IMG/VR virus record: IMGVR_UViG_3300013233_000093
Coordinates: 1 to 64,000 of that record
Strand: one strand, 5' to 3'
Length of the DNA: 64,000 nt
The translations under genes and the position numbers were made by a program. The notes under the pieces were generated by a model. It made no database searches and was not told the DNA's origin. It was given only the letters and a program-made list of their open reading frames with translations. Within the stretch, counting starts at the first letter, position 1; each line of letters starts with the position of its first letter. Positions 1-56,620 of this stretch are shown in pieces.

Positions 1-281
1 CCTGTGGGTGCCGGAGGCACCGGAGATGCTATCAGTGGCGACAGCGAAGCTGGGTCGCCCTGACGGATGTCAGATAACCCAACACGTGGACTCGCTGGCG
101 CTCCCCCACCTGTGGGTGGAGCCGCATCACCTGTGGGTGCCGGAGGCACCGGAGATGCTATCAGTGGCGACAGCGAAGCTGGGTCGCCCTGACGGATGTC
201 AGATAACCCAACACGTGGACTCGCTGGCGCTCCCCCACCTGTGGGTGGGGACACATCACCTGTGGGTGCCGGAGGCACCGG
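1..281. repeat. Tandem 129-bp (43-codon) Pro/Gly/Ala-rich repeat inside the tape-measure gene
   Basis: cctgtgggtgccggaggcaccgg recurs at 1, 130 and 259; first two units nearly identical. Confidence 0.95.
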
Positions 282-3200
282 GGGCGTGCCAGACGGTGTA
301 CCGGGAGGCGTTGGAGTTCTTCCTGGAACCGGAGGCGCTCCTTGTGCGCCACCAGCCAGCCATGCAATCATGTCCGTCTGCATGCGCCAAGCACCACCCA
401 CTATACCAGTTCCTCTACGCAAGACAGAAGAACTGTTCCCGCGCATAATACGACCTAAGGGATTTGTAAGACGCGTTCCTAAGCTGGCAGTTAACACCTT
501 CTTACCGTTTTTCTTTAGGAGTCCATCACGCACCTCCGCTGCGGTAAGGATTACATCGCCCTCACGGTTAAGAACCTCGCCGTCGATTTGCTTGTGCTTC
601 TTGATGGTCTTGCCTGTCCTACGACTTATATAGTCCCCACGTTTTAACCCACGCTTTGTCAGTCGCGGAGAATCTTCACCCGGAACATACACGTCGCCCC
701 GGTTAATAAATCCTTTCACAGATCTACCCACCATCTTAGCGATTGCCCATGCAGGTTTTAATAACAAGTGTTTTGCTATTTTACCCTGGAGTTTCCAAGA
801 GGCCTTGGTGAGTTTGATGAAGTTTCTAGCCACGTTCCGAAGCTTACCGGTACGGTTGCCAAACAGACCGGTTTGTAAATCCAATGCAGACACCACCTCC
901 TCACCTTTAGCGTCTATTACAGGGCCGTCAATGTCGCCGACCTTATGGATGACGTTACCAGTAGCTTTGTCGAAGTAACGACCTAAGCGCATGCCTCTCG
1001 CAGTCATCACAGGCGCCTTTTGCCGGGCAACGTAGATGTCTTGCGTGAAGAGATCTTTTACACCTCCACCAACTGCCTTACGAACGACGGATAGCGGATT
1101 ACGGATCAGTTTAGATAACCCGTTATCCTCGCCCAGGTATTGCCCGATGAAATCGGCTACCTTGTTAGCGCCCTGCTTTACAACGTTGTTGGTGTTCACT
1201 GCGTTATTAATGGTGTCGCCTACTGAGTTTGTGGTTTTGTTTCCACTTACTACATCGCCTGCTACGCGTGAAACCTTGTTGTAATACGAAGACACCATGT
1301 CAGCGGCATCGCCTGCACCAGACCGCATGCCACGTAAGACGCCAGATGAATCTCCAGTAATTGTACCAGACGCATCGCCTGCCTCCGCACCACTGGACTG
1401 TGATATGGATTGCAGTAAGACATGTTCTGTTGCAAAGTTACCGTCGATCGCTTTGACGACTTCTTCTAACCCCACGCGCATCGCCGATACAGCGGGGTCT
1501 TCTTCACCTGAAGTGATCTTAGCCTGACTTACATCGAGCGGTGCTTTGGACGTCGGTGCTAATACACCTGCGTTGTTCTGCATGTCGATTACAACCGGCG
1601 ATACCGCACCGAGTGTGTTTATGTCTGGCGTACCCGCGATGATCGTTTCAGTGGCTTGTAGGAGCGCAACTTTTAACGCCGACGCGGTACTTTGCTTGGT
1701 GGTTTCACTGGTGTTCTCCGTGACGGCATCGCTGGTGTTTTGTGATGGCCGCTCTGTGCCGTCCCAGGATATAGACGCTATCAGTGCGCTTAATGACTCT
1801 GGCAGATTGGTTACCTGACCATCTTCTTCCGGCTTGGTTGCAGCTGCTTCCTTAGGCTTAGGCAATTCACTTGTCTCACCTAACTGCACACCTTCTAACG
1901 CCGAAGCTAGGCCGTGACTGGTAGACGATGCATCGGTATACTTACTCACATCAGTATCGACTGTCTCTGTCCTAGACTCCACGAGGTTGATAATCGCATT
2001 TAGCGCATTATTAGCCACGTTGGCAGTCGAAGATTTGACACTCTTTACTGACTGGTCAAGTCCGATGGACTCACTGGCGTTACTCATCCCGTTTGTAAAT
2101 ACAGACTTTATGTCTGCGAAGGATACGGGACGTGAAGACATGTCACGGTACTTTGCATTAGTAACATCCACATTACTGAGTATGTCACTTCTTGCAGTGT
2201 CACCTGCAAACGCATAGTTAGCATACCCACCAACGGATTCTGATTTATCCGTTTCCTTAGACTTAAACACTTCTGACAATGTCGATACAGGGGACGAGTT
2301 AACGATTCCCTTAGATATGGCATTGTACCGATTAGTTATAGTCTCTCCTGGCGCTACCTGTAGTGCGATTAGCTCGTCGTTTACGGCTGACACAGTTGAC
2401 TCTACGTTACTTATCACAGAAGTAAGCGTTTCGTCCAGACGTTTACCCACCTTGGTATCCATCACTGTAGACGCTGCATCGCTGGTTGCGTACCTAGCAG
2501 TTTTAAGTGTGTCCTGCAAGGACGTCGAGGCTTTGGAATTCACAGCGCTGTTCACTAGGTCGTGTAGACTGCGTGATGTGGTGAGTGCCTTGTCTGTCTC
2601 GTTATGCACGGACGCCAGCGTTTCGTTTATGTTACTGTTGGAGGCGGAAGAATCGTCCGTACTTGTAGACGCACTCGCGTCGTCGGCAACACGTCCAATG
2701 GTATCGAAGATAGACGTTGTCTTATTCTCATCGGTGGACGATGTTAAATCGTTTACGACTGACGAAATAGACTTATACGCATCAGTGGACTTGGCCTTTG
2801 TCTGAAGCTTTGATACCGAGTTGCTAACGCTATCATACTTACGTGATACTGAGTCATGCAGGTCCGTAACCCGACTGCTGTTCATCACGTCGTTTAATAC
2901 GTTACCCACGCCGCGTTTTGTCGCGGGCGGTGTCTCTTCTCCTGCATGGTTGCCAGGTGGTTGGGTAGGGAGGTCTTCGGAGGCACCTGCGTTACCGTCA
3001 ACACTAGATATGTCTGCGTCTGTCTTGCCCGGTGTGCGAGTGAAGGTTTCGTCTATGGCAGTGGTTAACTCACTCCACGCCGTCGATAAATTGGCCTTGG
3101 CCTTTGTCCTGGCTTCTTCGATTACCAGCTTAGCATACGCCCGCGCCTCCGATTTACTTACATGCTCCAGATTTTCCTCCCCATATCGGACAGCGCTGGT

Positions 3201-6200
3201 GGATGTGCGGATGTCAGAACGGTTAGCTGCATGATCTTCTGTCGCTGCATCTGCGGCGTTGTCTATAGACTCCTGTACGGGCGTGACCACGTTGACTGCA
3301 TCGGCGCTTGTCGCTGACGGAGTGTTATAAATCTCGCGTATTGCCCTAACCAGAGTGGAGACCGTATGTCCGTCGAGCGAACTGTTTGTGTCTCCACCAT
3401 GGCCATCAACAACGACGGTCGTAGCGGGTTTCGGCGTGACCGCTGCCTTTGCGTTATCTGCTATGGTTCGAAGTGACAGGCTGGGCTTACCCACAGCGTC
3501 TTCCACAGTTGTGGCCTTTACCACAGCATCGCTAGCCGACTCTACTGCACCCTTTGCCTTAGTGGAAGAGAACTGTCGCTTGCCTTCTGTATCCACATCT
3601 GTCACGGCATCCAGAGCAGTCTCTTTAGCTGACTGCGCTAATGCAAGTCCTGTCTTGCCGACGGTAGTGGCAGATTTAAAACCGGCAGTCAGTCCGCTTG
3701 TCAGCTTACCTAACGCGGCATTGGCGGTTTTCTTACCAGCAGTAGTTGTGGCGTTTACGTCGATGCTACGTTTACCGTCTTCATCCACAACTGTAAAGTC
3801 ATTAAGCATGTCATTCTTAATGGATGATGCAGTTTTGCTAATCTCATCAAGCTTCGCATTTGCTTCCGTGGACAGATGTTTACGAGACTCGGTTACTGCA
3901 GTGGAGATGTTAGACTCCACAAAGCTAAGTGACTTATTAGCTACATCAGTGACCTTACTTGTCACAGTAGACGTAGCATCGCTTACTGTGGACTTGATCG
4001 TAGACGCAGTGGTCGTAAGTCTATCCACCAGGCTTTGGTTTGCAGCTAAGTTACCCGCTAACTGATCACTGATCGTGCTAAGGACCGATGCGATTGACGT
4101 ATCGCTTGATGCATTGGACGTGGTATCCGCACTGAGGTTAGAGGTTACCGTTATGCCCTTTGAGGTAACAACGACCGCATCTCTGATCTCGGTGAGCAGA
4201 TCTAGCTGATTTGACGTGGCCATCTCCATAGTGGATTGGCTTATCTCGTCGAGCAAGTCACGCAAGTCGGTGGTGTCGCAACAATCGTCACGATCTGCAG
4301 TGCTTGTTAAGATACGATCCGCTTCTTCTGCAGAAACGATTTTTGTATCACTGGTGGTCGTAGCCGTGCGTATGTATTCAGCCAGCTCGCTTTGTACCTC
4401 CATGGACAGTTCGGTAGCGGTGCTTATTTCGTGCAGTACGTCTACGACCGATGTGGAACTGGCTATGGTCTGCGTAGACGCGTTTATCTCGCCCAGTATA
4501 GCAGTCAGTTTGCCACAGCACTCGTCAAAGGATGCGCCGCCCGTGCCTGCCGGTGACGGTGTGCCTGGCGTGGGACTGTCTGGTGCACCTGCAGGAGGTG
4601 GTGTGGGTGGCTGTATTAACGGACCATTCAATAACGCGTTTGGCCCCTTCCTACCCAGCTTGAACTGCTCTAACGCCTCCATGTCGACCTGTGGGTTCCC
4701 AGAGGAATCCATGGTAATCAGACCCAATCGTTCTAGTGACTCTCGCTTACCGTTGAACATCAAGTTCTTGGTAATGTCGTTAAACTCAGACGAGCGTGTG
4801 TTAATACGACTAAACGAGTTTATCGCAGTGGACACCTTATCGTGATCACGTTCATTGTCGGCAGCCGCCATGACCTGCTCGATCTCAGTAGCCACATCGC
4901 TTGAACTGTAAAGCGTGTTTTTATCACTACTGGTATCCACGTAGTCTTTGGAAACAAATCCACCGCGTTTATCCCTCTGGGTGATAAAGCGCTCTATTAA
5001 CTCTTCCCTTGCTGTGGATGACAACGCGCCCACTGTGTCTATCGCATCTACCGCCTTACCTGCCTGTGTGCGAACTTGCATTTGTGCATCACGAGTGATG
5101 ACGGAATTAGCCACATCCATATCTTGCTGACTGTTCGTAATGAACTGCATCTTGTCCTGTGAATAAACAAGTCGCTCGTTCTTAGTACCAGTGGCAATGT
5201 TGGTTGTCTGTTCAAGGATGCGGGCGAGGTAACCTGGAATAGTAACGTTGATTGTGTTATGCGTTGTTGAATCGCTTAACGACGCACTTACGTTCTTCAT
5301 TTGACCAACTGTGTCACCTAGCGTGATACGATCGTTGAACACGGGGACTACCGACTTAAGCGCCTTTCCGGCCATATTAGCCGCAGACTCTACGCTAAAC
5401 GGCTTGGCTGCCTTTGCCATTGCAGCAAGTGCGTTGTTCTTCCAGCCGTAACCGTCGTTTGAATCAAACTCTTCATCCGACATCTTACCTTGCAACAAAC
5501 GCCTAGCTGCTCTTCGTGCCACGCCCTCGTCACGCTTATCAGAGTCCATCCTAGAACCATCGGCATTATAGTTAATAGTGCCATAGTTCTCTTCTCTGTA
5601 TCGCAGATCTGCCTTGCGTGCACGCTCTTCTTCGGCTAACGCACGCTCGTGTGCACGCCGCTGTCTGCTTAACTCTACTTCCGTCTGACGTGCATCAGCC
5701 TGTGTTTCACCGCCTAATTTGCCGGTGAGCGATACACTGGCATCTTCTATGGATTGCCTGGCGCCCTCTGCTACGTCTGAAATAGAGCTCGCTATACGTT
5801 TAAAGAACGTGGTGTCGGTAAGATCCTGATCACCTTCTGCGTACGCTGATGCCTCTGCTGCCGCGTTCTTCGTAAAATTACGACTGGCTCTGGCCATCGA
5901 CATCATCAATTTGTTATTTGATATCTTAAGCGCCAACGGAGCAGCTAACTTTTCAGCGCCCGCCTCTAGTCCCATCTCGGACGCCATGGCACCCATCATC
6001 TTTAAGCGGTCGGATCGACTCATCTCGCCAAAGCTGTCCCCGGACATGTCCGCGGTGCCCTGTGCCATACCCACAGCGTCCTTAACTACGGCGACACCTG
6101 CCATGGCTTTTTTCTGAATGGTGCCCTGTGCATTCTCTGTGTACTGGTCTGTAAAGTTCGTTACGGTATCTGCGATGGTTTCGTACATGCGCTCATCTAA

Positions 6201-6995
6201 CGTGGAACCCAGTCGTTCCGACATGCGACTCTTTACAATGTCCGGCAAGCCTGTATTCTTTTGTATGTTTTGAAGGAGCTTTGTAGCCCCATCAAAAAAC
6301 GGTTTGGACAATTCTACGAGTTCTTTAGTCGCAAAGAAAATACGATGTTGCAGTTCCAAGTGCTTACGCTGGTAGTCTATCAGCACGGTGTCTTGATAAC
6401 TAGCCAGTTTAGATACGGCAGACGCGATCTTTTGATTGACGTCTACGTTCTCTTCGTGCTGTGCGGTTGTACGTACGGCGTCTGCGTTGTTTACCGCGAC
6501 TTCGTAGTCCAGCTTGGCTGCGTCTGCCTTGGTCTCACGATCAAAGATGCCTGCCAAAGAAGTCTGAATCTGTGCTTCTTTTACGTCTACACGGTCAGGC
6601 GTTTGATAGCCCAGATCGTTAGCGAACTCCTTAACCGTGGAAGCCATGAATTCAGGTAAGAATTTATCCACCATGGCCTCGTTTTTAACGAGGAGTTTCT
6701 TTACTCCCAAAATGGCAGGTTCGAGTTCCTTCTCTGCCTTAGCTATGGTGTCTGAAACAAAGTCCATGCCACCGCCAATGGCGCTGTCAAGTTCTTGATA
6801 TTCAGTAGGCAATGCGTTACGGCGGATCGCATTACCGGCAACTTCGGATATTTTATCTTTAGTAATAGCGTCGAGTACGCCGGTCTTTATGGAATCAGCA
6901 GGCGAGCGATCGCCAGACGAATCCTCGTCCGCCTCCTCAAACCCGTCGAACTCATCCATATCGTCTAGAAAATCATCGTCGTCAAAATCTGACAT
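1..6995 (-). CDS. Tail tape-measure / tail-associated protein, phiKZ gp181-like (partial, >2330 aa, runs off left end)
   Basis: ATG at 6995 (MSDFDDDDFLDDMDEFDGF) with GAGGA RBS; absent from ORF track because no stop in window; + strand shadow ORFs at 196, 1036, 2317, 3355, 4216 and 6889 share one frame; motifs YQRKHLELQHR, TGLPDIVK, IPGYLARIL and two D(I/V)YV...IDGxV modules; divergent from vRNAP beta' as in phiKZ. Confidence 0.8.
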   Translation of the reverse strand, partial: MSDFDDDDFLDDMDEFDGFEEADEDSSGDRSPADSIKTGVLDAITKDKISEVAGNAIRRNALPTEYQELDSAIGGGMDFVSDTIAKAEKELEPAILGVKKLLVKNEAMVDKFLPEFMASTVKEFANDLGYQTPDRVDVKEAQIQTSLAGIFDRETKADAAKLDYEVAVNNADAVRTTAQHEENVDVNQKIASAVSKLASYQDTVLIDYQRKHLELQHRIFFATKELVELSKPFFDGATKLLQNIQKNTGLPDIVKSRMSERLGSTLDERMYETIADTVTNFTDQYTENAQGTIQKKAMAGVAVVKDAVGMAQGTADMSGDSFGEMSRSDRLKMMGAMASEMGLEAGAEKLAAPLALKISNNKLMMSMARASRNFTKNAAAEASAYAEGDQDLTDTTFFKRIASSISDVAEGARQSIEDASVSLTGKLGGETQADARQTEVELSRQRRAHERALAEEERARKADLRYREENYGTINYNADGSRMDSDKRDEGVARRAARRLLQGKMSDEEFDSNDGYGWKNNALAAMAKAAKPFSVESAANMAGKALKSVVPVFNDRITLGDTVGQMKNVSASLSDSTTHNTINVTIPGYLARILEQTTNIATGTKNERLVYSQDKMQFITNSQQDMDVANSVITRDAQMQVRTQAGKAVDAIDTVGALSSTAREELIERFITQRDKRGGFVSKDYVDTSSDKNTLYSSSDVATEIEQVMAAADNERDHDKVSTAINSFSRINTRSSEFNDITKNLMFNGKRESLERLGLITMDSSGNPQVDMEALEQFKLGRKGPNALLNGPLIQPPTPPPAGAPDSPTPGTPSPAGTGGASFDECCGKLTAILGEINASTQTIASSTSVVDVLHEISTATELSMEVQSELAEYIRTATTTSDTKIVSAEEADRILTSTADRDDCCDTTDLRDLLDEISQSTMEMATSNQLDLLTEIRDAVVVTSKGITVTSNLSADTTSNASSDTSIASVLSTISDQLAGNLAANQSLVDRLTTTASTIKSTVSDATSTVTSKVTDVANKSLSFVESNISTAVTESRKHLSTEANAKLDEISKTASSIKNDMLNDFTVVDEDGKRSIDVNATTTAGKKTANAALGKLTSGLTAGFKSATTVGKTGLALAQSAKETALDAVTDVDTEGKRQFSSTKAKGAVESASDAVVKATTVEDAVGKPSLSLRTIADNAKAAVTPKPATTVVVDGHGGDTNSSLDGHTVSTLVRAIREIYNTPSATSADAVNVVTPVQESIDNAADAATEDHAANRSDIRTSTSAVRYGEENLEHVSKSEARAYAKLVIEEARTKAKANLSTAWSELTTAIDETFTRTPGKTDADISSVDGNAGASEDLPTQPPGNHAGEETPPATKRGVGNVLNDVMNSSRVTDLHDSVSRKYDSVSNSVSKLQTKAKSTDAYKSISSVVNDLTSSTDENKTTSIFDTIGRVADDASASTSTDDSSASNSNINETLASVHNETDKALTTSRSLHDLVNSAVNSKASTSLQDTLKTARYATSDAASTVMDTKVGKRLDETLTSVISNVESTVSAVNDELIALQVAPGETITNRYNAISKGIVNSSPVSTLSEVFKSKETDKSESVGGYANYAFAGDTARSDILSNVDVTNAKYRDMSSRPVSFADIKSVFTNGMSNASESIGLDQSVKSVKSSTANVANNALNAIINLVESRTETVDTDVSKYTDASSTSHGLASALEGVQLGETSELPKPKEAAATKPEEDGQVTNLPESLSALIASISWDGTERPSQNTSDAVTENTSETTKQSTASALKVALLQATETIIAGTPDINTLGAVSPVVIDMQNNAGVLAPTSKAPLDVSQAKITSGEEDPAVSAMRVGLEEVVKAIDGNFATEHVLLQSISQSSGAEAGDASGTITGDSSGVLRGMRSGAGDAADMVSSYYNKVSRVAGDVVSGNKTTNSVGDTINNAVNTNNVVKQGANKVADFIGQYLGEDNGLSKLIRNPLSVVRKAVGGGVKDLFTQDIYVARQKAPVMTARGMRLGRYFDKATGNVIHKVGDIDGPVIDAKGEEVVSALDLQTGLFGNRTGKLRNVARNFIKLTKASWKLQGKIAKHLLLKPAWAIAKMVGRSVKGFINRGDVYVPGEDSPRLTKRGLKRGDYISRRTGKTIKKHKQIDGEVLNREGDVILTAAEVRDGLLKKNGKKVLTASLGTRLTNPLGRIMRGNSSSVLRRGTGIVGGAWRMQTDMIAWLAGGAQGAPPVPGRTPTPPGTPSGTPPVPPAPTGDVSPPTGGGAPASPRVGLSDIRQGDPASLSPLIASPVPPAPTGDAAPPTGGGAPASPRVGLSDIRQGDPASLSPLIASPVPPAPT

Positions 6996-7048
6996 GGTCT
7001 TATCCTCATTTAATACAAAGTATCCGCTTATAAAAGGCATGCCTCATT

Positions 7049-16189: not shown

Positions 16190-16272
16190 CTATATTACTT
16201 TAGTGATACTTAGGTAATAATACTTAGGTACGTTTGTTATAAACTATTAGATCTCTAATATGAGATCAAAGG
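16190..16272 (+). promoter_or_regulatory. Early promoter variant (TATATTAC) with two-hairpin leader
   Basis: CTATATTAC matches phiKZ early motif; leader shared with copy at 34634. Confidence 0.7.
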
Positions 16273-29570: not shown

Positions 29571-29572
29571 CC

Positions 29573-29600
29573 ATACTGCACGCCATATGGCGTGCAGTAT
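29573..29600. promoter_or_regulatory. Perfect 28-bp palindrome just upstream of terminase RBS
   Basis: ATACTGCACGCCATATGGCGTGCAGTAT; no T-tract. Confidence 0.6.
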
Positions 29601-29614
29601 ATGCTGGAGAGGTA

Positions 29615-39092: not shown

Positions 39093-40991
39093 TTAATCGT
39101 CATCATCGTCCCATTCCAAACCAGCGTTGGATTGGTATTCAGTCACACGGGTTTCAAAGAAATTTTTTTCTTTCTTTAAAAGTGCCTGTTCGTCTAACCA
39201 TTCACATGCATTCGTTGCACCAGGAAAGGGTTCTTCCAAATGCAATGCACGTGCTCTTCGATTGGCCATGTAGTGGAACTGTGCAATGTGTTGATCCTTG
39301 GTGTAACCCAACATCGGTTTCTTAAGGATGTACCCAGCGTAATCACGTTCTACTTGTTCTGCCTCATCCCACATATCGCGGACTTCCTGTGGATCTAGAA
39401 CCACACCTTCTTCTTTGATGATCTGGTTTGCTACACGGATACCGAACGAAGCATGCATGACTTCATCCCGCATAATGTATTGCAACTGCTCACCAGTACC
39501 TTTCATAAGACCTCTACGCTGCAATGCGAAGATCGGAGTGAAACCGTTATAGAACCAACATCCCTCGAAGATGGCTGCGAAGAAGATGTACGACATGACA
39601 AACTCACGCAGGTGATCTGGATTGGTTAAGTCCAGTGTTTTAGACATGGAAGCTGCAAGTCGTTTTTCTGCCATCCGGATCTTAGCGTTGATCTCAGGCA
39701 CCACCAGATAACGATTATAGATCTCATCCTGATCTAACCCAATGGTCTCAATGCAATGTTGGTACGTCCATGTGTTACCGGACACAACCACTTTGCCGTC
39801 AAGACGAGTGATGATCACTCGGGAAGGTACACCTACGCTGTAGACATTACCATTGTACGCTTCTAGTGATTTCTGCAGCCGCAAGCCATTCACGCACGTG
39901 CGATGTTCAAAATGCACAGACGTGCCGTTCGGACGATCGTCTACATGCATGACAGTACCACACAGTGGTGCTAACGCACTGAAGGTTTCCTGCACACGTT
40001 TAAAGTCCCCGTACAGCACCCGACCCCAAGTCGTTAGTTCAGATAAAAGCTCCGTGCACTGACTGTAGTTTAAGGCAGGCAGGTACGCGCGCTCCAGCGA
40101 TTCCAACACGCATTGTAAAATCGTTGCGAAGTTTACAATTTTAAACCATGCACTGTTGGCATCGTCGCAGCCCATCTCATATTCGATATCACTCGTCTTA
40201 CAAAGCCACACCAATCTACTGATGGATCTTGGTTCGTGAAGAATCACATCGTGACCTTCAATGCTGGTGACGTGCGCTAGCGTGGCCACGGTCAGTCTCG
40301 TTTCGTTGTCGAGACTTACCCTGCGATTGTTGTTAAACGTTCTGGCACTGACGGGGAACCCGTGCTTTCCAAGCTCCAACTCGCCCGCTTTAGCAAGCGT
40401 CAGTTCAGTATCGTCAAAGTCGAAGTACGCACAGTTATGATTCGGAGTGACCTTAGTGAGATAATTGTCACCCGTGATGACTACAAGATTGCCCTCGTAG
40501 TGATCTTTGGTGACACCAAGATGGTTCACAAACGTGACTTTCCCGTTAGCATTAAAGTCCGCTACGGTATCAGTATCCGCAAGGTCTCTAAAGTCCACCC
40601 AACCACGACCGGTCAAGACTTCTGTGCCTTCCACGTAACAATGCAATGCTTCTTCGAACACCTGACGTGCTTGGTAAAGTTGCAGCTCCGGTGCAGTCAT
40701 GCGCTCCATGACGGCTAAACCGATGTTACGCATTGCCATAATGTCAGATGTAGTGAGGTACGCTAAGACGTTTTCGTACACATGACGCTCATTGTCGCTC
40801 AGTTTATGCCGAAAGTCATGCACGTCCTGCGTCATGTTCACGTCTAACGGCACCCAGTGGTTCTTATTGGCGTTGGTAAAATACGTAAACGCCCATGGAT
40901 ACTTGAAGGGCGCTAACTGGTTTATATTACCCTTGCCGTTTACAACTCTCTTGTCGGATGCACGTACACCCGATTTCTTTTCTTCGCTCAT
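39093..40991 (-). CDS. nrdB: Ribonucleotide reductase class I beta subunit (intein-containing)
   Basis: PFKYPWA, NHWVP, EEALH, EGCWFYNGF, YIMRDEVMH, KEKNFFETRVTEYQ; 343 aa after removing intein. Confidence 0.95.
   Translation of the reverse strand: MSEEKKSGVRASDKRVVNGKGNINQLAPFKYPWAFTYFTNANKNHWVPLDVNMTQDVHDFRHKLSDNERHVYENVLAYLTTSDIMAMRNIGLAVMERMTAPELQLYQARQVFEEALHCYVEGTEVLTGRGWVDFRDLADTDTVADFNANGKVTFVNHLGVTKDHYEGNLVVITGDNYLTKVTPNHNCAYFDFDDTELTLAKAGELELGKHGFPVSARTFNNNRRVSLDNETRLTVATLAHVTSIEGHDVILHEPRSISRLVWLCKTSDIEYEMGCDDANSAWFKIVNFATILQCVLESLERAYLPALNYSQCTELLSELTTWGRVLYGDFKRVQETFSALAPLCGTVMHVDDRPNGTSVHFEHRTCVNGLRLQKSLEAYNGNVYSVGVPSRVIITRLDGKVVVSGNTWTYQHCIETIGLDQDEIYNRYLVVPEINAKIRMAEKRLAASMSKTLDLTNPDHLREFVMSYIFFAAIFEGCWFYNGFTPIFALQRRGLMKGTGEQLQYIMRDEVMHASFGIRVANQIIKEEGVVLDPQEVRDMWDEAEQVERDYAGYILKKPMLGYTKDQHIAQFHYMANRRARALHLEEPFPGATNACEWLDEQALLKKEKNFFETRVTEYQSNAGLEWDDDDD
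39774..40640 (-). mobile_element. Intein (289 aa) in nrdB
   Basis: Begins CYVEGTEVLT...GW, has VTPNH block B, ends VYSVGVPS...VVVSGN before +1 Thr; interrupts EEALH|TWTY. Confidence 0.92.
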
Positions 40992-41001
40992 GGTATCTCC
41001 G

Positions 41002-43641
41002 TTACTGACATGCTTCGCAGTCAGGGTCTAAAATAGAACACACCTTAGGTGCAGTCTCTGTTGGTTCTTCCGCGTCCCTAGCACCAGTAGCTGCCAGTGT
41101 ACGCAGGTAGTACGTTGTCTTCAGCCCATGGTTCCAAGCTGCTGTGTACAACCGCTCCACTGACGGGCCTGTGGGTGACGCCAAGTACAGATTTAACGAC
41201 CCGCCTTGATCAATCCATCGCTGCCGGCGAGCCATTGCCTTGATCAACCACATACTGTCGATTTGAAATGCGGTTTTATACAGGTCTTTCATCTCGGGTG
41301 GGATAAGTGGATGTTTACTTATGTCCCCGTCATGCGCTGCTAGGTAATCGGACATTTGCTTATCCCAAATACCCAGCTCTGTGAGATCGTCTACCAAGTA
41401 TTGGTTTACCACAGTAAACTCACCAGACAGGTTTGACTTCACATACATGTTCTGGTAAGTAGGCTCGATTGACTGACTCACACCGCAGATGTTTGAAATC
41501 GTAGCTGTGGGTGCGATGGCTCTCAGCAAAGAGTTACGCATGCCTGTTTTTACCATGCGCTCAAAACCATGTGCCCTCCAGTTGAACTTCGGCTTGTCGG
41601 TGATCTTAAACTCTGCAGGGCGGCGTTGCATAAGTTCTTCATACGTATCGATTGGTAATACACCACCACTCCAATCACTACCCACGAAGCTTTCATACTG
41701 ACCCAGTACATCTGCAAGTTCCGCGGAGGCGACTGTGGCGTAATACGAGATGGCCTCGCTTATATCCGATGCCAACTCCATGGCACGTTCGCTCTCGTAA
41801 GGAGTACGTGTCTTATGCAGTACATCCTGGAATCCCATTTCACCAAGACCTACTGGACGATGCCGTAGATTAGAGTTCTCGGCTTGTTTAATGGGATACA
41901 TGTTTACATCAATTACTGCGTCTAGCATTAGCATTGCCAGGGCAACCGTGTCTTTTAACTTGACGTGATCGATCTCGCCAGCAGCATTCACATGCGGAAG
42001 CAGGTTAACGGAAGCCAGGTTACAGACAGCCACCTCATCCACAGATGTGTTTTCCATGATCTCTGTGCAGAGATTACTGCTGTGCACCACACCCGCGTGT
42101 TTTTGAGGAGATCTGATGTTACATGGATCTTTGAATGTAAACCAGGGATGTCCGGTTTCCACTAACATGACGAGCATCTTACGCATGAACTTACGGGCAC
42201 CGACTACTTGGAAGTTTTCGATTTCTCCATTACGGGCTTGTTCTTCACGTAGCTCATACGCCACCTTAAACTCTTCCCCGTACAGGTCGTGTAGCTCTGG
42301 TACATCGGTGGGAGAGAATAACGTCCATGTCGCTTCTTTGGTCTGTGCGCGTTCCATAAACAAGTCAGGGATCCAGTTAGCCACGTTTATGTCATGTGCC
42401 CTACGACGTTCGTCGCCAGTGACCTTGCGCAACTCAATGAAGTCCGCAATGTCGAGATGCCATGTTTCGAGATACACGCATGCGGCTCCGCGTCGCTTAC
42501 CGCCCTGATTAACCGCTACTGCAGTATCGTTAATCACTTTGATAAAGGGGATCACGCCCTGTGATTGTCCACCTGTACCTTCGATGAAAGAACCTAATGC
42601 ACGGACTGGTGTCATATCGTTACCCAAGCCACCTGCGAACTTAGACAACATCGCATCGTCTTTAATGGCGTCATAGATGCCCTCTAAGTCATCGGGGAAC
42701 GTACTTAGGTAACACGAGCTCATTTGTGAGTTTAACGTCCCTGAGTTAAACAGGGTGGGTGTGGAAGGCATTAGTACACGATCTGTCATAGCCCAGAATG
42801 CAGACAGTGCAAACGTACGGTGATACGACGTGCGATACAAGATGCCCATCGCTACTCTGGCAAGAAACATTTTGGGTGTTTCAATGCACACACCATTTAC
42901 CCTTACGAAGTAGCGGTCGATTAGTGTACTGATGCCAAGATAGGTATAACGTTCTTTCGATACGTATTCGTCCATGCCAGCAAACAACTCGTCCGTGTTG
43001 TCATAAGCGGCCAATACCTTAGGATCGTAACGTTTGTTATCGATGCCTAGCTGCCATGCCTGGTTGTAGTAATCCACGCCACTGCCAGTTAGTCCATGGG
43101 CACGCTGCATTCTAATTTCATTTACCTTAAGAAGCATCCGTGCTGCCATTTCGTCGTATGCACGACCCAGTTTGATAAACGCGGTGCAGGTGAGTACGCA
43201 TGACTCCAAGATCTCATCGTCAGTCATGCCCGGCAGAGTGTTCTTAGCGTGCTCGTTCATCATCATCACCACGTCAATGCCTTCACGTCCTGTGATGACT
43301 TCGATGAGCGGAAGATAATTACGTTCCTTATCCGGACTGACGTTACTGACGTCATCACCGCGCTTAATGGCATGGGTGATGCGATGGTACACGTAAGCAC
43401 TCACTGTCTTTACTAATCCCATTCTCATGAGCTGTCTTACAACCACATCCTGTATTTCTTCTACTGTGTAGGTGTGGTGGTCTGTAACGTCTAGCCGTAA
43501 TTGCTTTTCTATTTCAGATACGCAGTAGTCGATGCCCTTAGTGTCGTCCTCGCACCAAGCTGCTGTAACCGCTCTTCTGATAAATGACATGTCAAATGCG
43601 ACACGTTGTCCACTACGTTTGATAACACTTAATTCCAACAT
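41002..43641 (-). CDS. nrdA: Ribonucleotide reductase class I alpha subunit with ATP cone
   Basis: VIKRSG ATP cone, STPTLFN, SSCYL, NLCTEI, VCNLAS, LKTTYYLR, C-terminal CEACQ. Confidence 0.96.
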   Translation of the reverse strand: MLELSVIKRSGQRVAFDMSFIRRAVTAAWCEDDTKGIDYCVSEIEKQLRLDVTDHHTYTVEEIQDVVVRQLMRMGLVKTVSAYVYHRITHAIKRGDDVSNVSPDKERNYLPLIEVITGREGIDVVMMMNEHAKNTLPGMTDDEILESCVLTCTAFIKLGRAYDEMAARMLLKVNEIRMQRAHGLTGSGVDYYNQAWQLGIDNKRYDPKVLAAYDNTDELFAGMDEYVSKERYTYLGISTLIDRYFVRVNGVCIETPKMFLARVAMGILYRTSYHRTFALSAFWAMTDRVLMPSTPTLFNSGTLNSQMSSCYLSTFPDDLEGIYDAIKDDAMLSKFAGGLGNDMTPVRALGSFIEGTGGQSQGVIPFIKVINDTAVAVNQGGKRRGAACVYLETWHLDIADFIELRKVTGDERRRAHDINVANWIPDLFMERAQTKEATWTLFSPTDVPELHDLYGEEFKVAYELREEQARNGEIENFQVVGARKFMRKMLVMLVETGHPWFTFKDPCNIRSPQKHAGVVHSSNLCTEIMENTSVDEVAVCNLASVNLLPHVNAAGEIDHVKLKDTVALAMLMLDAVIDVNMYPIKQAENSNLRHRPVGLGEMGFQDVLHKTRTPYESERAMELASDISEAISYYATVASAELADVLGQYESFVGSDWSGGVLPIDTYEELMQRRPAEFKITDKPKFNWRAHGFERMVKTGMRNSLLRAIAPTATISNICGVSQSIEPTYQNMYVKSNLSGEFTVVNQYLVDDLTELGIWDKQMSDYLAAHDGDISKHPLIPPEMKDLYKTAFQIDSMWLIKAMARRQRWIDQGGSLNLYLASPTGPSVERLYTAAWNHGLKTTYYLRTLAATGARDAEEPTETAPKVCSILDPDCEACQ

Positions 43642-43711
43642 TGTAATTTCCTTTGCTTAGGTACATGATTCTAACCAGTGCAAAATTACAGGAATGGAGA
43701 AGTAAACAAGC

Positions 43712-43745
43712 CTATATCACTATTATGATAACGTACTTTGTTATC
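43712..43745 (+). promoter_or_regulatory. Early promoter + stem-loop cassette
   Basis: CTATATCACTATTATGATAACGTACTTTGTTATC, identical to the 19634 copy from the core onward. Confidence 0.8.
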
Positions 43746-43766: not shown

Positions 43767-44096
43767 GTGTATATGGAAACAGTAAATGATTTTATCCCTA
43801 AACTACTGAACGCTCGTAGGCTGGTAGATCAGTTGATCAAGGGAGATACATCTGGTCGCCTGTCGCTTGACGCAGTGCATTACTTCGAGGACAGTCCTCA
43901 TGTGTACTACCTTGGCACTGGTACTAACCATGTGGACTGGTACATCGCACCGGCCACTCTGGCACTGGACGCTATGGATATCGTAACTTACGGCATCCAA
44001 CATAACGGGCGTATTGCCACAGCAACCGCCAGTCCCATCGGACTGATTATCTTTACTCGTCTGTGTGACGAGTTAATCTCTACCGAAGATTTATAG
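43767..44096 (+). CDS. Hypothetical early protein
   Basis: GAGG RBS after promoter cassette. Confidence 0.65.
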   Translation: MYMETVNDFIPKLLNARRLVDQLIKGDTSGRLSLDAVHYFEDSPHVYYLGTGTNHVDWYIAPATLALDAMDIVTYGIQHNGRIATATASPIGLIIFTRLCDELISTEDL

Positions 44097-44104
44097 GATC
44101 CGTA

Positions 44105-44437
44105 ATGACCAGCAACATTGTGCAAGTAGTAGAGCGCACGTTCCGACACATCCCAGACGAGGGGGTTTGTCTAGGCGGTGTACCCGATCTATCCACGTAC
44201 ATCGTAGGACGGATTCTGGAGCGATTTGAGAAGAGTTCTTCTGAGGATGTTAAATCGGTAAGGGTCATCGTAGATCACGTCGCTAATGGATGGCTACGGA
44301 CTCGTGTGGGTGAATCGTGTACGTTACTTGGATCCATGTGCGATTGCAGTACGCATAACTGGAAGGAGGAGTTCCTGACATTACACAACCCAGAGCAAGT
44401 AAGTCTAGAGGGGTACTTAAACAGTGTCTTAACTTAA
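44105..44437 (+). CDS. Hypothetical protein
   Basis: AGGA RBS, contiguous with upstream gene. Confidence 0.65.
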   Translation: MTSNIVQVVERTFRHIPDEGVCLGGVPDLSTYIVGRILERFEKSSSEDVKSVRVIVDHVANGWLRTRVGESCTLLGSMCDCSTHNWKEEFLTLHNPEQVSLEGYLNSVLT

Positions 44438-44900
44438 AGCACTTATTTAAGTGTTTAAAGAGCTCTATATCTTAATATGTTTTTATAAGTTATATAAAAA
44501 ATTAAGATGTATAGCAATTAGTTGTTACAAAGCCAACCTGTCCCAATCACTCCGGTGGTTGGGTAGGGAGGAGAGAGCCTGGAAAAAGCCGGAGGGTTTT
44601 TACAGATAAACAACAGTAGTGACTTACGTAGTAAGTCACTACTCCTTCACTACCACTGTACCTTAAGACTTGCTAGAGGAGTTTAGATACACTACGTTAG
44701 GCTTTACTTGATTGGACATTGTCAAGTAAGAATTAGGTAAGTGTGTCTTTAGTCTCTTACACTACTTATCTTTCTATCTTGCTTTATTAAGATTAGATAG
44801 ATTAAGTGAGTGAGCGATCGGAAAAGGCTGTGGTGTGAAATGTACGTAAAACCACCGGTAGGTATTCTGCTCATCGGTGTAACCTTAAACCTGGAGTAAT
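44434..44900. other. Long non-coding region with many stem-loops (candidate origin or structured RNA)
   Basis: No ORF of 60 aa or more; hairpins at 44434-58, 44465-514, 44542-63, 44615-43, 44685-748, 44853-79. Confidence 0.55.
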
Positions 44901-44906
44901 ACGAAG

Positions 44907-45347
44907 ATGAAAGAAAGTAAACTGGCTGACTGCGGTATCATGGACAGCATGCTGTGTGTGATTGACGGGTCTGTGGAACTTAAAGAGTTCTTAGTGACGT
45001 TGATCGAGTCTGATGCGGATACTGTCAATGTAGATCATGATTTGTACATGCTCATGAATGCATGTAACGTGAAAGTGTTTGTATCGTCGAGTAAAGAATG
45101 GTACGACGTCGACGTCGTGCACGGTGCCGACTGTACACGAGACGAGGAAGATTACGAGCAGATCGCATGGGTGGATCGTTACGGCGTGGTGCGTCGTGGT
45201 GAAGACGAGGTGCGTCGGCCGGTCTGTCTTGTGTACGTGCGTGAGGTGGCCGGGAATGCCTCAGATACACCTGAGGTAGAGTCTGTGGTAGAAACGCCGT
45301 CACAGGGCATTGTAGGACGTCTGGTGGGCTGGTTTAAAAACCTGTAA
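44907..45347 (+). CDS. Hypothetical protein
   Basis: GGAG RBS behind leader hairpin. Confidence 0.7.
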   Translation: MKESKLADCGIMDSMLCVIDGSVELKEFLVTLIESDADTVNVDHDLYMLMNACNVKVFVSSSKEWYDVDVVHGADCTRDEEDYEQIAWVDRYGVVRRGEDEVRRPVCLVYVREVAGNASDTPEVESVVETPSQGIVGRLVGWFKNL

Positions 45348-45424
45348 GCTTTTAACATCTTTATCACGGGTAGGTATCCTACTTATCCGTGTACTTAAAC
45401 TGTAAACCTGGAGTAAATAGAAAA

Positions 45425-46030
45425 ATGAGTGGTCTTAGTAAATTAGCTGTATTACGCGGTGATCTCCGTATTATGGAGCGCTTCCTGCACGGTTTGGATT
45501 TGGATGTATACACTGCTGTGTGTGGCGATGCGCTGAAGTGGGTGCATGGTGAAGGTCATAGTGCCAGTGTGGGCGTGCCCAGTGCCATGCATGCGCTGGC
45601 CTTGGATGTATGCGTAGAGGGTGGGTACGTGACTGTGAAGGGCTGGCATGGCATGGTGCATGAGATGTACGTGTCTGTGGTCGGATATGTACGCTTCGAT
45701 GGTGGTATGGATGCAATGAAAGACGAAGCGGTGCGTTACGCATTCACTGTATACCGTCGTGATGTGAATGAGATCCACTATGTGGTTAAGCAATGGCTAC
45801 GTGTCAAGGCGATGGGTCACACATTGCAGGGACCGTTAAATCACTATGCCGTGCATGAGATGTACGGTCGTGGCTTGCAGGCGATCGCGCATGCTGACGG
45901 CAAGCTTGATCTTGTCATGGCAGAAGAGACGGGCGGGATGTCGGTCAGTGCTCGTGTGAGTATGGATGGGTTTGTGATCGAGGATGGCGCGGTGGACGAT
46001 GTGGCGTTTTACATCTACTGTCCCTCCTAA
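45425..46030 (+). CDS. Hypothetical protein
   Basis: GGAG RBS before MSGLSK; same leader type as 44907. Confidence 0.7.
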   Translation: MSGLSKLAVLRGDLRIMERFLHGLDLDVYTAVCGDALKWVHGEGHSASVGVPSAMHALALDVCVEGGYVTVKGWHGMVHEMYVSVVGYVRFDGGMDAMKDEAVRYAFTVYRRDVNEIHYVVKQWLRVKAMGHTLQGPLNHYAVHEMYGRGLQAIAHADGKLDLVMAEETGGMSVSARVSMDGFVIEDGAVDDVAFYIYCPS

Positions 46031-46070: not shown

Positions 46071-46119
46071 GCCATAGAGCCTCTTAGAGAGGCTCTATGG
46101 CAGCTTAAAACTCTTTTTT
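46071..46119 (+). terminator. Hairpin terminator
   Basis: GCCATAGAGCCTCT-TAG-AGAGGCTCTATGGC. Confidence 0.7.
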
Positions 46120-46135
46120 ACCGAGGATTAGAAAT

Positions 46136-49266: not shown

Positions 49267-49322
49267 CCCTAACAAGCCGCTTGGTTTCTCAAGCGGCCTC
49301 TATGCAGTAATAAGGAAGAAAT

Positions 49323-56152: not shown

Positions 56153-56214
56153 AAATACAAGAAGCAAAAAACCAATAACGGGAATTAGCCCGTTATAAAC
56201 AGGAGAAGATTAAA

Positions 56215-56346
56215 ATGCAATACATTAATTGGTTATTGATGGTAATCCCGGCACTACTGACTCCACTGGCTGCTATAGCTGGTGTATGGATCGCGGTGGT
56301 TTGTCCAATCAGAGTGAGTAAAGATTGCCTACGTAAGGAGGGTTAA
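56215..56346 (+). CDS. 43-aa single-TM peptide
   Basis: AGGAG RBS; MQYINWLLMVIPALLTPLAAIAGVWIAVVCPIRVSKDCLRKEG. Confidence 0.55.
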   Translation: MQYINWLLMVIPALLTPLAAIAGVWIAVVCPIRVSKDCLRKEG

Positions 56347-56348
56347 TT

Positions 56349-56540
56349 GTGATATTTTATCACTACGCAAGTGAGCAGTATCCAGAGTTATTATCCAAGC
56401 AGGCACAGGGCGGCCCGACGAACGCAGATTTAAAAGAGTAAATTCGAATGTCTGTGTTTAGAGGTTATCCCGCATCGTATGAGAAACACATATCCCTGTT
56501 TATAGAACCACCTCCCTTTAAAGAGTTACCGAGTATATAA
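56349..56540 (+). pseudogene. Probable pseudogene with in-frame TAA
   Basis: AAGGAGG RBS; MIFYHYASEQYPELLSKQAQG...LKE*IRMSVFRGYPASYEKHISLFIEPPP...; stop at 56439. Confidence 0.55.
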
Positions 56541-56620
56541 TGACTTACCCTAAAAACGGTAAGATCAAAGTAAGTAAAACAAGACGCATTGTCTTATAAC
56601 CCAAAAGAAGGATTAGAATT

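What the first reader, a model, noticed from the sequence alone, without database searches (positions are those of the whole stretch)
44434..44900. ~470-nt non-coding region packed with stem-loops: origin, packaging site or ncRNA
Seen: the largest ORF-free gap in the window. It has an AT-rich block (44430-44530) forming two hairpins, CCCAATCAC/GTGGTTGGG, a perfect 13-bp stem AGTAGTGACTTAC-GTA-GTAAGTCACTACT, and nested AGATACACT...TTACTTGA...TCAAGTAA...AGTGTGTCT. G-U-compatible pairs suggest a + strand RNA; the AT-rich block and adjacent skew suggest an origin. Origins in this phage family are poorly defined.
Basis: partly seen in the sequence, partly recalled or inferred. Interest (0 to 1): 0.6.

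Follow-up and report, generated by a model that had tools for sequence, protein, structure and literature searches.

The report
Hairpin-rich non-coding spacer, jumbo-phage early operon
A 469-base gene-free stretch in an orphan phiKZ-like giant phage really is packed with seven strong hairpins and holds the most AT-rich spot of the genome. It looks like an RNA-level spacer and leader inside an early operon, not a demonstrated replication origin or a known RNA family.

Summary
Window 44438-44906 is the largest truly ORF-free gap. It holds seven local hairpins, each individually significant, and folds far better than shuffles (z -6.6 on the + strand, -5.4 on the - strand). Bases 44430-44529 are the most AT-rich 100 nt of the whole 222.9-kb genome.

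The excess structure is entirely local. Pairs spanning more than 70 nt add no more energy than in shuffles (z -0.3), so there is no evidence for one large folded RNA.

Three hairpins (H3, H5, H7) fold significantly only on the + strand, the transcribed strand. The gap lies about 700 nt downstream of one of 31 early-type promoters, all on the + strand. No hairpin-plus-T-run terminator occurs before 46.1 kb.

GC skew simply follows gene orientation. There are no iterons, no Rfam match and no homologue in any collection, so covariation cannot be tested.

Best reading (about 0.45): a non-coding intercistronic spacer and leader that acts as RNA, in processing, stability or translational control. 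It includes a diverged early-promoter-like core and a leader duplicated before the next gene. An origin remains possible (about 0.1). Interest is moderate to low.

The parts
43695..43735 (+). Early-type (class A) promoter that most likely drives transcription through the gap. It is the weakest member of the family.
   Evidence: Pattern and nhmmer profile hit, 29.5 bits. The core CTATATCACTATTATGAT is followed by a leader hairpin.
43767..44437 (+). Two orphan early ORFs upstream of the gap (43767-44096, 109 aa; 44105-44437, 110 aa).
   Evidence: ORF list. No PHROG or Pfam family. No relatives. One search gave only one weak hit (E 1.8e-5) to a repeat of a 1894-aa protein.
44437..44456 (+). H1: an 8-bp hairpin that starts at the stop codon of the upstream ORF.
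   Evidence: z -3.3; pair probability 0.90.
44462..44515 (.). H2: a 22-bp AT-rich hairpin that folds equally on both strands. It is the core of the most AT-rich 100 nt of the genome. Its 5' arm carries a diverged early-promoter-like core (CTATATC, then 4 bases, then TATG, 44465-44479), followed at once by the inner hairpin.
   Evidence: z -4.7 on both strands. (GC 0.20, rank 1); the relaxed promoter pattern hits 24 promoters plus only 4 other sites, this being one. The profile search does not report it.
44537..44567 (+). H3: a 13-bp GC-rich hairpin that is + strand specific.
   Evidence: z -3.7 on +, -1.05 on -; pair probability 0.97-1.00.
44564..44605 (+). Purine-rich, Shine-Dalgarno-like tract ending in a run of five T. 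Bases 44554-44571 repeat exactly at 2956-2973.
   Evidence: Sequence. 18-nt exact repeat. Empirical frequency of such matches is about 5-10%.
44615..44643 (.). H4: a perfect 13-bp stem with a 3-nt loop, built like the genome's terminator hairpins. It has no T-run on the + strand; a T-rich tail lies on the - strand side.
   Evidence: z -6.3. The terminator scan flags it on the - strand only. Comparison with the roughly 45 hairpins of stem 11 bp or more.
44685..44748 (+). H5: a nested imperfect hairpin of about 25 bp, favoured on the + strand and long enough to be an RNase III substrate.
   Evidence: z -3.8 on +, -2.3 on -.
44760..44812 (.). H6: an imperfect AU-rich hairpin of about 21 bp.
   Evidence: z -3.3 on +, -3.9 on -.
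44852..44906 (+). H7 plus leader of gene 44907: a hairpin, then TTAAACCTGGAGTAA with the Shine-Dalgarno GGAG, then ATG.
   Evidence: z -3.4 on +, -0.9 on -. The leader is duplicated at 45365-45424 with one compensatory stem change, CACCG/CGGTG versus CACGG/CCGTG.
44907..46030 (+). Two orphan ORFs downstream (44907-45347, 146 aa; 45425-46030, 201 aa). Each is preceded by a copy of the same leader.
   Evidence: Only self-hits in the 5.8-billion-protein search.
46071..46125 (+). First canonical terminator downstream: a 14-bp perfect hairpin followed by a T-run. It is the likely end of the transcription unit.
   Evidence: 7 T in the best 8-nt window downstream.

Best explanation
The gap is a genuine non-coding spacer inside a + strand early transcription unit of an orphan phiKZ-like (nucleus-forming type) jumbo phage. 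That unit runs from a promoter near 43.71 kb to a terminator near 46.1 kb. The 'structure' in the gap is a string of seven independent local hairpins, not one large folded RNA.

I propose that it works as RNA.
- H1 and H2 close the upstream two-gene block. They act as 3'-end or pause hairpins.
- H2 may also re-initiate transcription from its diverged early-promoter-like core.
- The three long imperfect hairpins (H2, H5, H6, 21-25 bp) and the clamp-like H4 serve as intercistronic processing and stability elements. This is the way RNase III sites split and stabilise the T7 early polycistronic mRNA.
- H7 plus its Shine-Dalgarno box is the translational leader of gene 44907. The same leader is reused before gene 45425.

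Shown here: the non-coding status, the seven significant hairpins, the + strand bias, the position within an early unit, and the leader duplication.

Inferred: that the gap is transcribed, any cleavage or stabilisation, and any promoter activity in H2.
For: - Each hairpin beats its shuffles, and H3, H5 and H7 do so only on the + strand.
- The whole region gives z -6.6 on + and -5.4 on -.
- G-U pairs add about 32 kcal/mol on the + strand and about 8 on the - strand.
- All excess stability is local: z -5.7 with pair span of 70 nt or less, and z -0.3 for the long-range gain.
- All 31 early-type promoters lie on the + strand, one at 43709.
- There is no hairpin-plus-T-run terminator on the + strand before 46071-46125.
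- Windows within 1 kb downstream of early promoters are over-folded genome-wide (11% with z below -2, against about 2% elsewhere; p 2e-8).
- The H7 leader is duplicated before the next gene with a compensatory stem change.
- There is no credible ORF and no coding remnant.
- Related giant phages are reported to produce 5'UTR-derived and intergenic small RNAs (PMC11512511).
Against:
- No homologue exists anywhere, so no covariation test is possible beyond the one internal duplicate.
- H2, H4 and H6 fold equally on both strands, so a DNA-level role is not excluded for them.
- The gap is far longer than the leaders I see after this phage's early promoters, roughly 40-100 nt. phiKZ 5'UTRs are mostly 31-40 nt (PMC8244752).
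- The host and its RNases are unknown.
Confidence: 0.45

Rival explanations
1. The gap encodes an independent non-coding RNA (or a very long leader). It would be started by the diverged early-promoter-like core in the 5' arm of H2, with a start near 44480, and would run through H3-H6.
For: - The relaxed promoter pattern (TATAT[CT], 4-7 bases, TATG) hits the 24 class A promoters and only four other sites in both strands of 223 kb. One of those is 44466 on the + strand, in an intergenic position.
- As in real promoters, a hairpin begins right after TATG, and GTTTA sits at the usual upstream distance.
- H3 and H5 are + strand specific.
Against: - The AC of TATAT[CT]AC, invariant in all 31 promoters, is missing, and the spacing is one base short.
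- The nhmmer promoter profiles do not report the site even at E 100.
- No terminator follows, so the RNA would run into gene 44907.
- There is no Rfam match and no significant long-range architecture.
Confidence: 0.2
2. The gap is a non-functional relic. It would be fused remains of intergenic cassettes (a fossil promoter, a terminator-type hairpin that lost its T-run, a leader) left after loss of small early genes.
For: - Intergenic regions of this genome are built from the same kinds of pieces: long perfect hairpins, promoters and leader hairpins.
- H4 has terminator architecture without a T-run.
- H2 carries a degraded promoter core.
- The leader-specific 8-mers TTAGGTAA and GTCTTTAG both occur at 44732-44750.
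- No homologues exist to show conservation.
Against: - Seven hairpins all remain intact and individually significant.
- H3, H5 and H6 resemble no other element of the genome.
- No coding remnant is detectable.
- The genome is about 92% covered by called ORFs, with very few long gaps.
Confidence: 0.2
3. The gap is a replication origin. The AT-rich, cruciform-capable H1-H2 block would be the unwinding element, opened or primed by transcription from the upstream early promoter, as at the T7 primary origin or T4 oriF/oriG.
For: - 44430-44529 is the single most AT-rich 100-nt window of the genome, and every other top window is an early promoter.
- H2 is palindromic at the DNA level, with equal z on both strands.
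- An early promoter lies upstream and a promoter-like core lies inside.
- Two searches of the paper library turned up no mapped origin for this family.
Against: - GC skew changes sign only with gene orientation. Plus-strand gene blocks on both sides of the site (8-35 kb and 45-64 kb) have the same positive skew.
- There are no iterons or tandem repeats.
- The flanking proteins show no initiator, helicase or primase signature.
- The canonical promoter is 700 nt away, not adjacent.
Confidence: 0.1
4. The gap is the packaging (pac) site.
For: Only that it is a conspicuous non-coding region with palindromes.
Against: - It lies 13 kb from the terminase gene (29429-31747).
- It has no repeated short motifs.
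- The contig begins inside a giant ORF, so the assembly gives no hint of a fixed end here.
Confidence: 0.03

Closest known systems
RNase III processing hairpins between cistrons of the phage T7 early polycistronic mRNA (from my own knowledge of the T7 literature)
   Same: Imperfect hairpins of 20 bp or more lie between short early cistrons of one promoter-driven unit. The proposed role is separation and 3'-end stabilisation of the cistron RNAs.
   Different: There is no sequence similarity. Cleavage is untested and the host RNase III is unknown. Here seven hairpins are clustered in one 469-nt gap, rather than one per junction. Transcription is presumably by a phage multisubunit RNA polymerase.
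5'UTR-derived and intergenic small RNAs of giant phages 201phi2-1 and phiKZ (PMC11512511; PMC8244752)
   Same: They are non-coding structured RNA segments in phiKZ-like genomes, found downstream of phage promoters and upstream of genes.
   Different: Those RNAs are under 250 nt and were defined by mapped starts and ends. One is conserved upstream of a tail gene. The present element has no mapped ends, no homologue, and sits among orphan early genes.
Transcription-primed phage origins (T7 primary origin; T4 oriF/oriG) (from my own knowledge)
   Same: An extreme AT-rich block lies downstream of a phage promoter.
   Different: The canonical promoter is 700 nt upstream. There is no skew or coverage evidence and no known initiator nearby.
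This genome's own early promoter-leader cassettes and hairpin-plus-T-run terminators
   Same: H2 contains CTATATC, then 4 bases, then TATG, followed by a hairpin. H4 has the long perfect stem and short loop of the terminators. Bases 44732-44750 carry two leader-specific 8-mers.
   Different: The invariant AC of the promoter core and the terminator T-run are missing. The promoter profiles do not score the site.

Membership tests
Any curated RNA family (Rfam 15: group I/II introns, riboswitches, ribozymes, tmRNA, 6S, GOLLD/ROOL/HEARO and others) | Covariance-model score at or above the family's gathering threshold | tested here: not met
   The best match is Yfr19 at 22.6 bits against a gathering score of 70 (E 0.5). 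Nothing else has E below 1. No tRNA or tmRNA was found.
Large structured non-coding RNA (one global fold) | Long-range helices more stable than expected from composition | tested here: not met
   The energy gain from pairs spanning more than 70 nt is -17.4 kcal/mol, against -16.0 +/- 4.7 in shuffles (z -0.3). The local-only fold gives z -5.7.
Large structured non-coding RNA (one global fold) | Covariation in homologues | not testable with these tools
   No homologue was found in the phage, IMG/VR, metagenome, E. coli or plasmid collections.
Phage replication origin (AT-rich unwinding element type) | Exceptionally AT-rich, easily melted block | tested here: met
   GC is 0.20 over 44430-44529, rank 1 of all 100-nt windows of the genome.
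Phage replication origin (AT-rich unwinding element type) | Strand-composition (skew) inflection independent of gene orientation | tested here: not met
   The sign of the skew tracks the gene strand on both sides. The local minimum coincides with the strand switch at 43.64-43.77 kb.
Phage replication origin (AT-rich unwinding element type) | Iterons or initiator-binding repeats, or an adjacent initiator gene | tested here: not met
   Only short imperfect two-copy repeats are present and there are no tandem repeats. The flanking proteins have no family.
Phage replication origin (AT-rich unwinding element type) | Coverage peak or initiation intermediates | not testable with these tools
Early (virion-RNA-polymerase-type) promoters of this phage | Invariant core TATAT[CT]AC at fixed spacing to TATG or TAGTGA, and a profile match | tested here: not met
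   The site at 44465-44479 has CTATATC followed by TT in place of AC, and is one base short. nhmmer reports no hit in the gap at E 100.
Intrinsic terminators of this genome | Long perfect GC-containing hairpin followed by a T-run on the transcribed strand | tested here: not met
   H4 has the stem, but at most 4 T in any 8-nt window within 30 nt downstream on the + strand. It is flagged only on the - strand.
Intercistronic RNase III-type processing sites | Imperfect double-stranded stem of about two helical turns between cistrons of one transcript | tested here: met
   H2 has 22 bp, H5 about 25 bp and H6 about 21 bp. All lie between ORFs of one predicted unit.
Intercistronic RNase III-type processing sites | Cleavage in vivo or in vitro | not testable with these tools
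   This needs RNA end mapping or an enzyme assay.

The most novel reading that the evidence does not exclude
The H1-H2 block, the most AT-rich and cruciform-capable 100 bp of the genome, is the replication origin of this nucleus-forming-type jumbo phage. It would be fired by early transcription. Alternatively, the gap yields a roughly 400-nt early non-coding RNA of a new family, started from a hairpin-embedded variant promoter.
Probability: 0.12. Interest if true: 0.65.

Novelty: new member of a known kind. Interest (0 to 1): 0.3.

Why it matters
The transcription units, RNA processing and origins of phiKZ-like jumbo phages are poorly mapped. This phage is an orphan lineage: its closest RNA-polymerase subunit in the phage collection is only 41% identical.

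The region gives a concrete, testable set of cis-elements:
- seven hairpins;
- a variant promoter core;
- a duplicated leader;
- the AT-richest site of the genome.

It also points to a genome-wide pattern of over-folded early transcripts. If the origin reading were right, it would give a first candidate origin for this family. As it stands, the finding is a well-defined but ordinary-looking regulatory spacer.

Tried and rejected
- **Known RNA families.** Rfam was run twice with permissive thresholds and ARAGORN once. Nothing was found. A group I or II intron splitting one gene is rejected: there is no model hit, the upstream ORF has its own stop, and the downstream ORF has its own Shine-Dalgarno box and ATG.
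- **Hidden small gene.** Only GTG-initiated ORFs of 52 and 29 aa occur on the + strand, without ribosome-binding sites. tblastx against the phage's own genome shows no coding remnant.
- **Homologues for covariation.** I tried blastn and tblastn against the phage collection. I tried IMG/VR with the flanking proteins, the promoter motif, the H4 palindrome and an RNA-polymerase subunit. The metagenome scan with the promoter 19-mer gave 14 single chance hits with no tblastx similarity. The 5.8-billion-protein search returned self only for both downstream ORFs. The exhaustive HMMER search of the upstream ORF gave only a weak repeat match. E. coli genomes and plasmids gave nothing.
- **Flanking protein function.** PHROGs, Pfam and the ESM Atlas gave nothing usable.
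- **Paralogy of the two downstream ORFs.** There is none.
- **The 18-nt exact repeat with 2956-2973 as an antisense seed.** Matches of 18 nt or more occur for about 5-10% of random 473-nt segments, so it is not significant.
- **Identifying the phage from the literature by genome length.** This failed.

Full report
**Context.** The window is the first 64 kb of a single 222,906-bp contig. It encodes the following:
- split multisubunit RNA-polymerase beta-type subunits (7049-8689 and 8634-12974);
- a tail sheath and a large terminase;
- an SbcC-like protein;
- class I ribonucleotide reductase genes on the minus strand (39093-43641).

This is a phiKZ-like jumbo phage. The best match to its RNA-polymerase subunit in 50,697 phage records is only 41.5% identical (Vibrio phage BONAISHI). 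IMG/VR holds no close relative.

**The observation.** The stretch 44438-44906 lies between two orphan + strand ORFs, 44105-44437 and 44907-45347.
- No ATG-initiated + strand ORF of 20 aa or more occurs in the gap.
- The only gap of equal size in the window (56153-56620) contains a 43-aa ORF with a good ribosome-binding site.
- The 473-nt segment folds to -156.3 kcal/mol on the + strand against -111.9 +/- 6.7 for shuffles (z -6.6). On the - strand it folds to -123.5 against -94.3 +/- 5.4 (z -5.4).
- In a regression over 1,856 windows of 240 nt across the genome, the windows starting at 44401 and 44521 rank 12th and 18th for excess folding.

**What the structure really is.** The minimum-energy fold draws a 305-nt multi-branched domain closed by long-range helices. 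I refolded the region with pairs limited to a 70-nt span.
- The real sequence still stands out (z -5.7).
- The extra energy from longer-range pairs (-17.4 kcal/mol) equals that of shuffles (-16.0 +/- 4.7, z -0.3).

The signal is therefore seven separate local hairpins:

| Hairpin | Coordinates | Description | z (+ strand) | z (- strand) |
|---|---|---|---|---|
| H1 | 44437-44456 | 8 bp, starts at the upstream stop codon | -3.3 | not run |
| H2 | 44462-44515 | 22 bp, AT-rich | -4.7 | -4.7 |
| H3 | 44537-44567 | 13 bp, GC-rich | -3.7 | -1.05 |
| H4 | 44615-44643 | perfect 13 bp | -6.3 | not run |
| H5 | 44685-44748 | about 25 bp, nested | -3.8 | -2.3 |
| H6 | 44760-44812 | about 21 bp | -3.3 | -3.9 |
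| H7 | 44852-44878 | leader hairpin | -3.4 | -0.9 |

The + strand fold uses 16 G-U pairs of 167, against 6 of 149 on the - strand. Forbidding G-U costs 32 kcal/mol on the + strand and 8 on the - strand. H3, H5 and H7 therefore point to a + strand RNA. H2, H4 and H6 are equally good as DNA palindromes.

**Transcriptional setting.** K-mer enrichment in intergenic DNA revealed a strongly conserved promoter-like family.
- It has 24 copies of a class A motif with the core CTATATCACTATTATGAT.
- It has 7 copies of a class B motif with CTATATTACTTTAGTGA.
- Each copy is followed by conserved leader hairpins, and all 31 lie on the + strand.
- The core resembles the AT-rich early-promoter element described for phiKZ. 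That description rests on my own knowledge of Ceyssens et al. 2014. [quoted passage not shown]

One copy, the weakest-scoring, sits at 43695-43735 just upstream of ORF 43767.

Canonical terminators in this genome are long perfect hairpins followed by T-runs. None occurs on the + strand between that promoter and 46071-46125. The gap is thus most simply an internal part of a roughly 2.4-kb early unit carrying four small orphan genes.

Windows within 1 kb downstream of the 31 promoters are over-folded genome-wide. Their mean regression z is about -0.45, and 10-12% have z below -2, against 1-3% elsewhere (Mann-Whitney p 2e-8). Terminator and leader hairpins contribute to this.

**Elements inside the gap.**
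1. **Leader duplication.** The last 55 nt (H7, then TTAAACCTGGAGTAA with the Shine-Dalgarno box, then ATG) recur at 45365-45424 before the next gene. The stem shows one compensatory exchange, CACCG/CGGTG versus CACGG/CCGTG. This is the only internal covariation available. It marks H7 as a real leader element. The two proteins are not paralogues.
2. **Promoter-like core in H2.** The 5' arm of H2 reads CTATATC, then 4 bases, then TATG, followed at once by the inner hairpin. A relaxed pattern (TATAT[CT], 4-7 bases, TATG) finds the 24 class A promoters and only four other sites on both strands of the genome. This is one of them. However, the AC that is invariant in all 31 promoters is replaced, the spacing is one base short, and the promoter profiles do not report the site. 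It is either a variant or a fossil promoter.
3. **H4.** It has the build of the genome's terminator hairpins but no T-run on the + strand. The T-rich tract lies on its other side.
4. **Leader-specific 8-mers.** Bases 44732-44750 contain two 8-mers, TTAGGTAA and GTCTTTAG, that are otherwise found almost only in intergenic DNA, where they occur in the early-leader sequences.

**Origin and packaging readings.**
- The one strong fact for an origin is that 44430-44529 is the most AT-rich 100-nt window of the entire genome (GC 0.20). All the next windows are early promoters.
- The skew argument does not hold. Skew is negative over minus-strand gene blocks (1-7 kb and 35-43.6 kb). It is positive over plus-strand blocks on both sides of the site (8-35 kb and 45-64 kb). 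The inflection is therefore the gene-strand switch at 43.64-43.77 kb, and the genome-wide cumulative curve rises throughout.
- There are no iterons or tandem repeats.
- The flanking proteins give no hint of an initiator.
- Nothing supports a packaging site.

**Comparison with known systems.** No Rfam family matches.
- In function, the nearest analogues are the RNase III hairpins between cistrons of the T7 early mRNA (my own knowledge).
- Also close are the 5'UTR-derived and intergenic small RNAs mapped in 201phi2-1 and phiKZ (PMC11512511; PMC8244752).
- Membership of any defined family could not be shown.
- The origin family fails two of the three features I could test.

**Verdict.** The region is a real, statistically solid cluster of hairpins in a true non-coding gap.
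- The best-supported reading (about 0.45) is an RNA-level intercistronic spacer and leader of an early operon.
- The rivals are an independent RNA from the variant promoter (0.2), a relic of fused control elements (0.2), an origin (0.1) and a packaging site (0.03).
- Without relatives or reads the choice cannot be settled computationally.
- Interest is moderate to low for the finding itself.

**Elsewhere in the genome.** The most striking thing I met lies outside the window. An 810-nt open reading frame at 175,633-176,442 is packed with perfect hairpins and has a fold z of -17. It deserves its own look.

Noticed in passing
L001:1634-2443 (G000:C1:175633-176442, outside the window): An open 269-codon ORF is packed with a dozen or more short perfect hairpins. 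Its RNA fold is -390.7 kcal/mol against -279.3 +/- 6.5 for shuffles (z -17), the most over-folded part of the genome. It follows a class B early-type promoter and has no PHROG family. Hairpin arms encode both sides of what look like beta-turn segments. The purpose is unknown.
   Followed up: partly
whole genome; in the window at 16191, 19639, 33906, 34639, 38389, 43709, 48906, 51289, 55240, 58502, 59320: There are 31 highly conserved early-type promoters (24 class A, 7 class B) with conserved leader hairpins. All lie on the + strand. Transcripts within 1 kb downstream are significantly over-folded.
   Followed up: partly
window 44853-44899 and 45365-45416; also 46604: A leader of about 50 nt (hairpin plus TTAAACCTGGAGTAA) is duplicated before two adjacent non-paralogous genes. 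GTAGGTA occurs 49-58 nt upstream of the ATG of three consecutive genes. It could be a local promoter or an operator for an RNA-binding regulator.
   Followed up: partly
window 44554-44571 and 2956-2973: An 18-nt exact + strand repeat. The second copy lies inside the giant minus-strand ORF 3..7040, so a + strand RNA from the gap would be antisense to that mRNA. Matches of this length occur for about 5-10% of random segments.
   Followed up: yes
window 39093-40991 (-): The ribonucleotide reductase small-subunit ORF is 632 aa. The Pfam domain matches in two stretches, which suggests a large insertion or an N-terminal fusion. There is also a weak thymidylate-synthase PHROG hit at residues 108-187.
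   Followed up: no
window 44105-44437 (+): Residues 5-55 of this orphan protein weakly match (E 1.8e-5) a motif repeated many times in a 1894-aa protein. That protein scores for SAM (sterile alpha motif) domains. The ORF itself shows no direct Pfam SAM hit.
   Followed up: partly
window 3-7040 (-) and the contig start: A giant ORF of more than 2346 aa, with a tail-fibre-like PHROG segment, runs off the start of the contig. The record therefore starts inside a gene, so it is circularly permuted or arbitrarily opened.
   Followed up: no
many intergenic regions, e.g. window 46071-46104 and 49267-49322; G000:C1 66868-66910, 91441-91480, 145801-145835: Terminator-type hairpins often end in, or are directly followed by, TATG. 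In three cases the following sequence is TATGTCGTATATTAC. This may mark combined terminator and middle or late promoter modules.
   Followed up: no
window 45001-46000: This window has the highest GC skew of the 64 kb (+0.30) and GC 0.51, over the two orphan genes just downstream of the gap.
   Followed up: no
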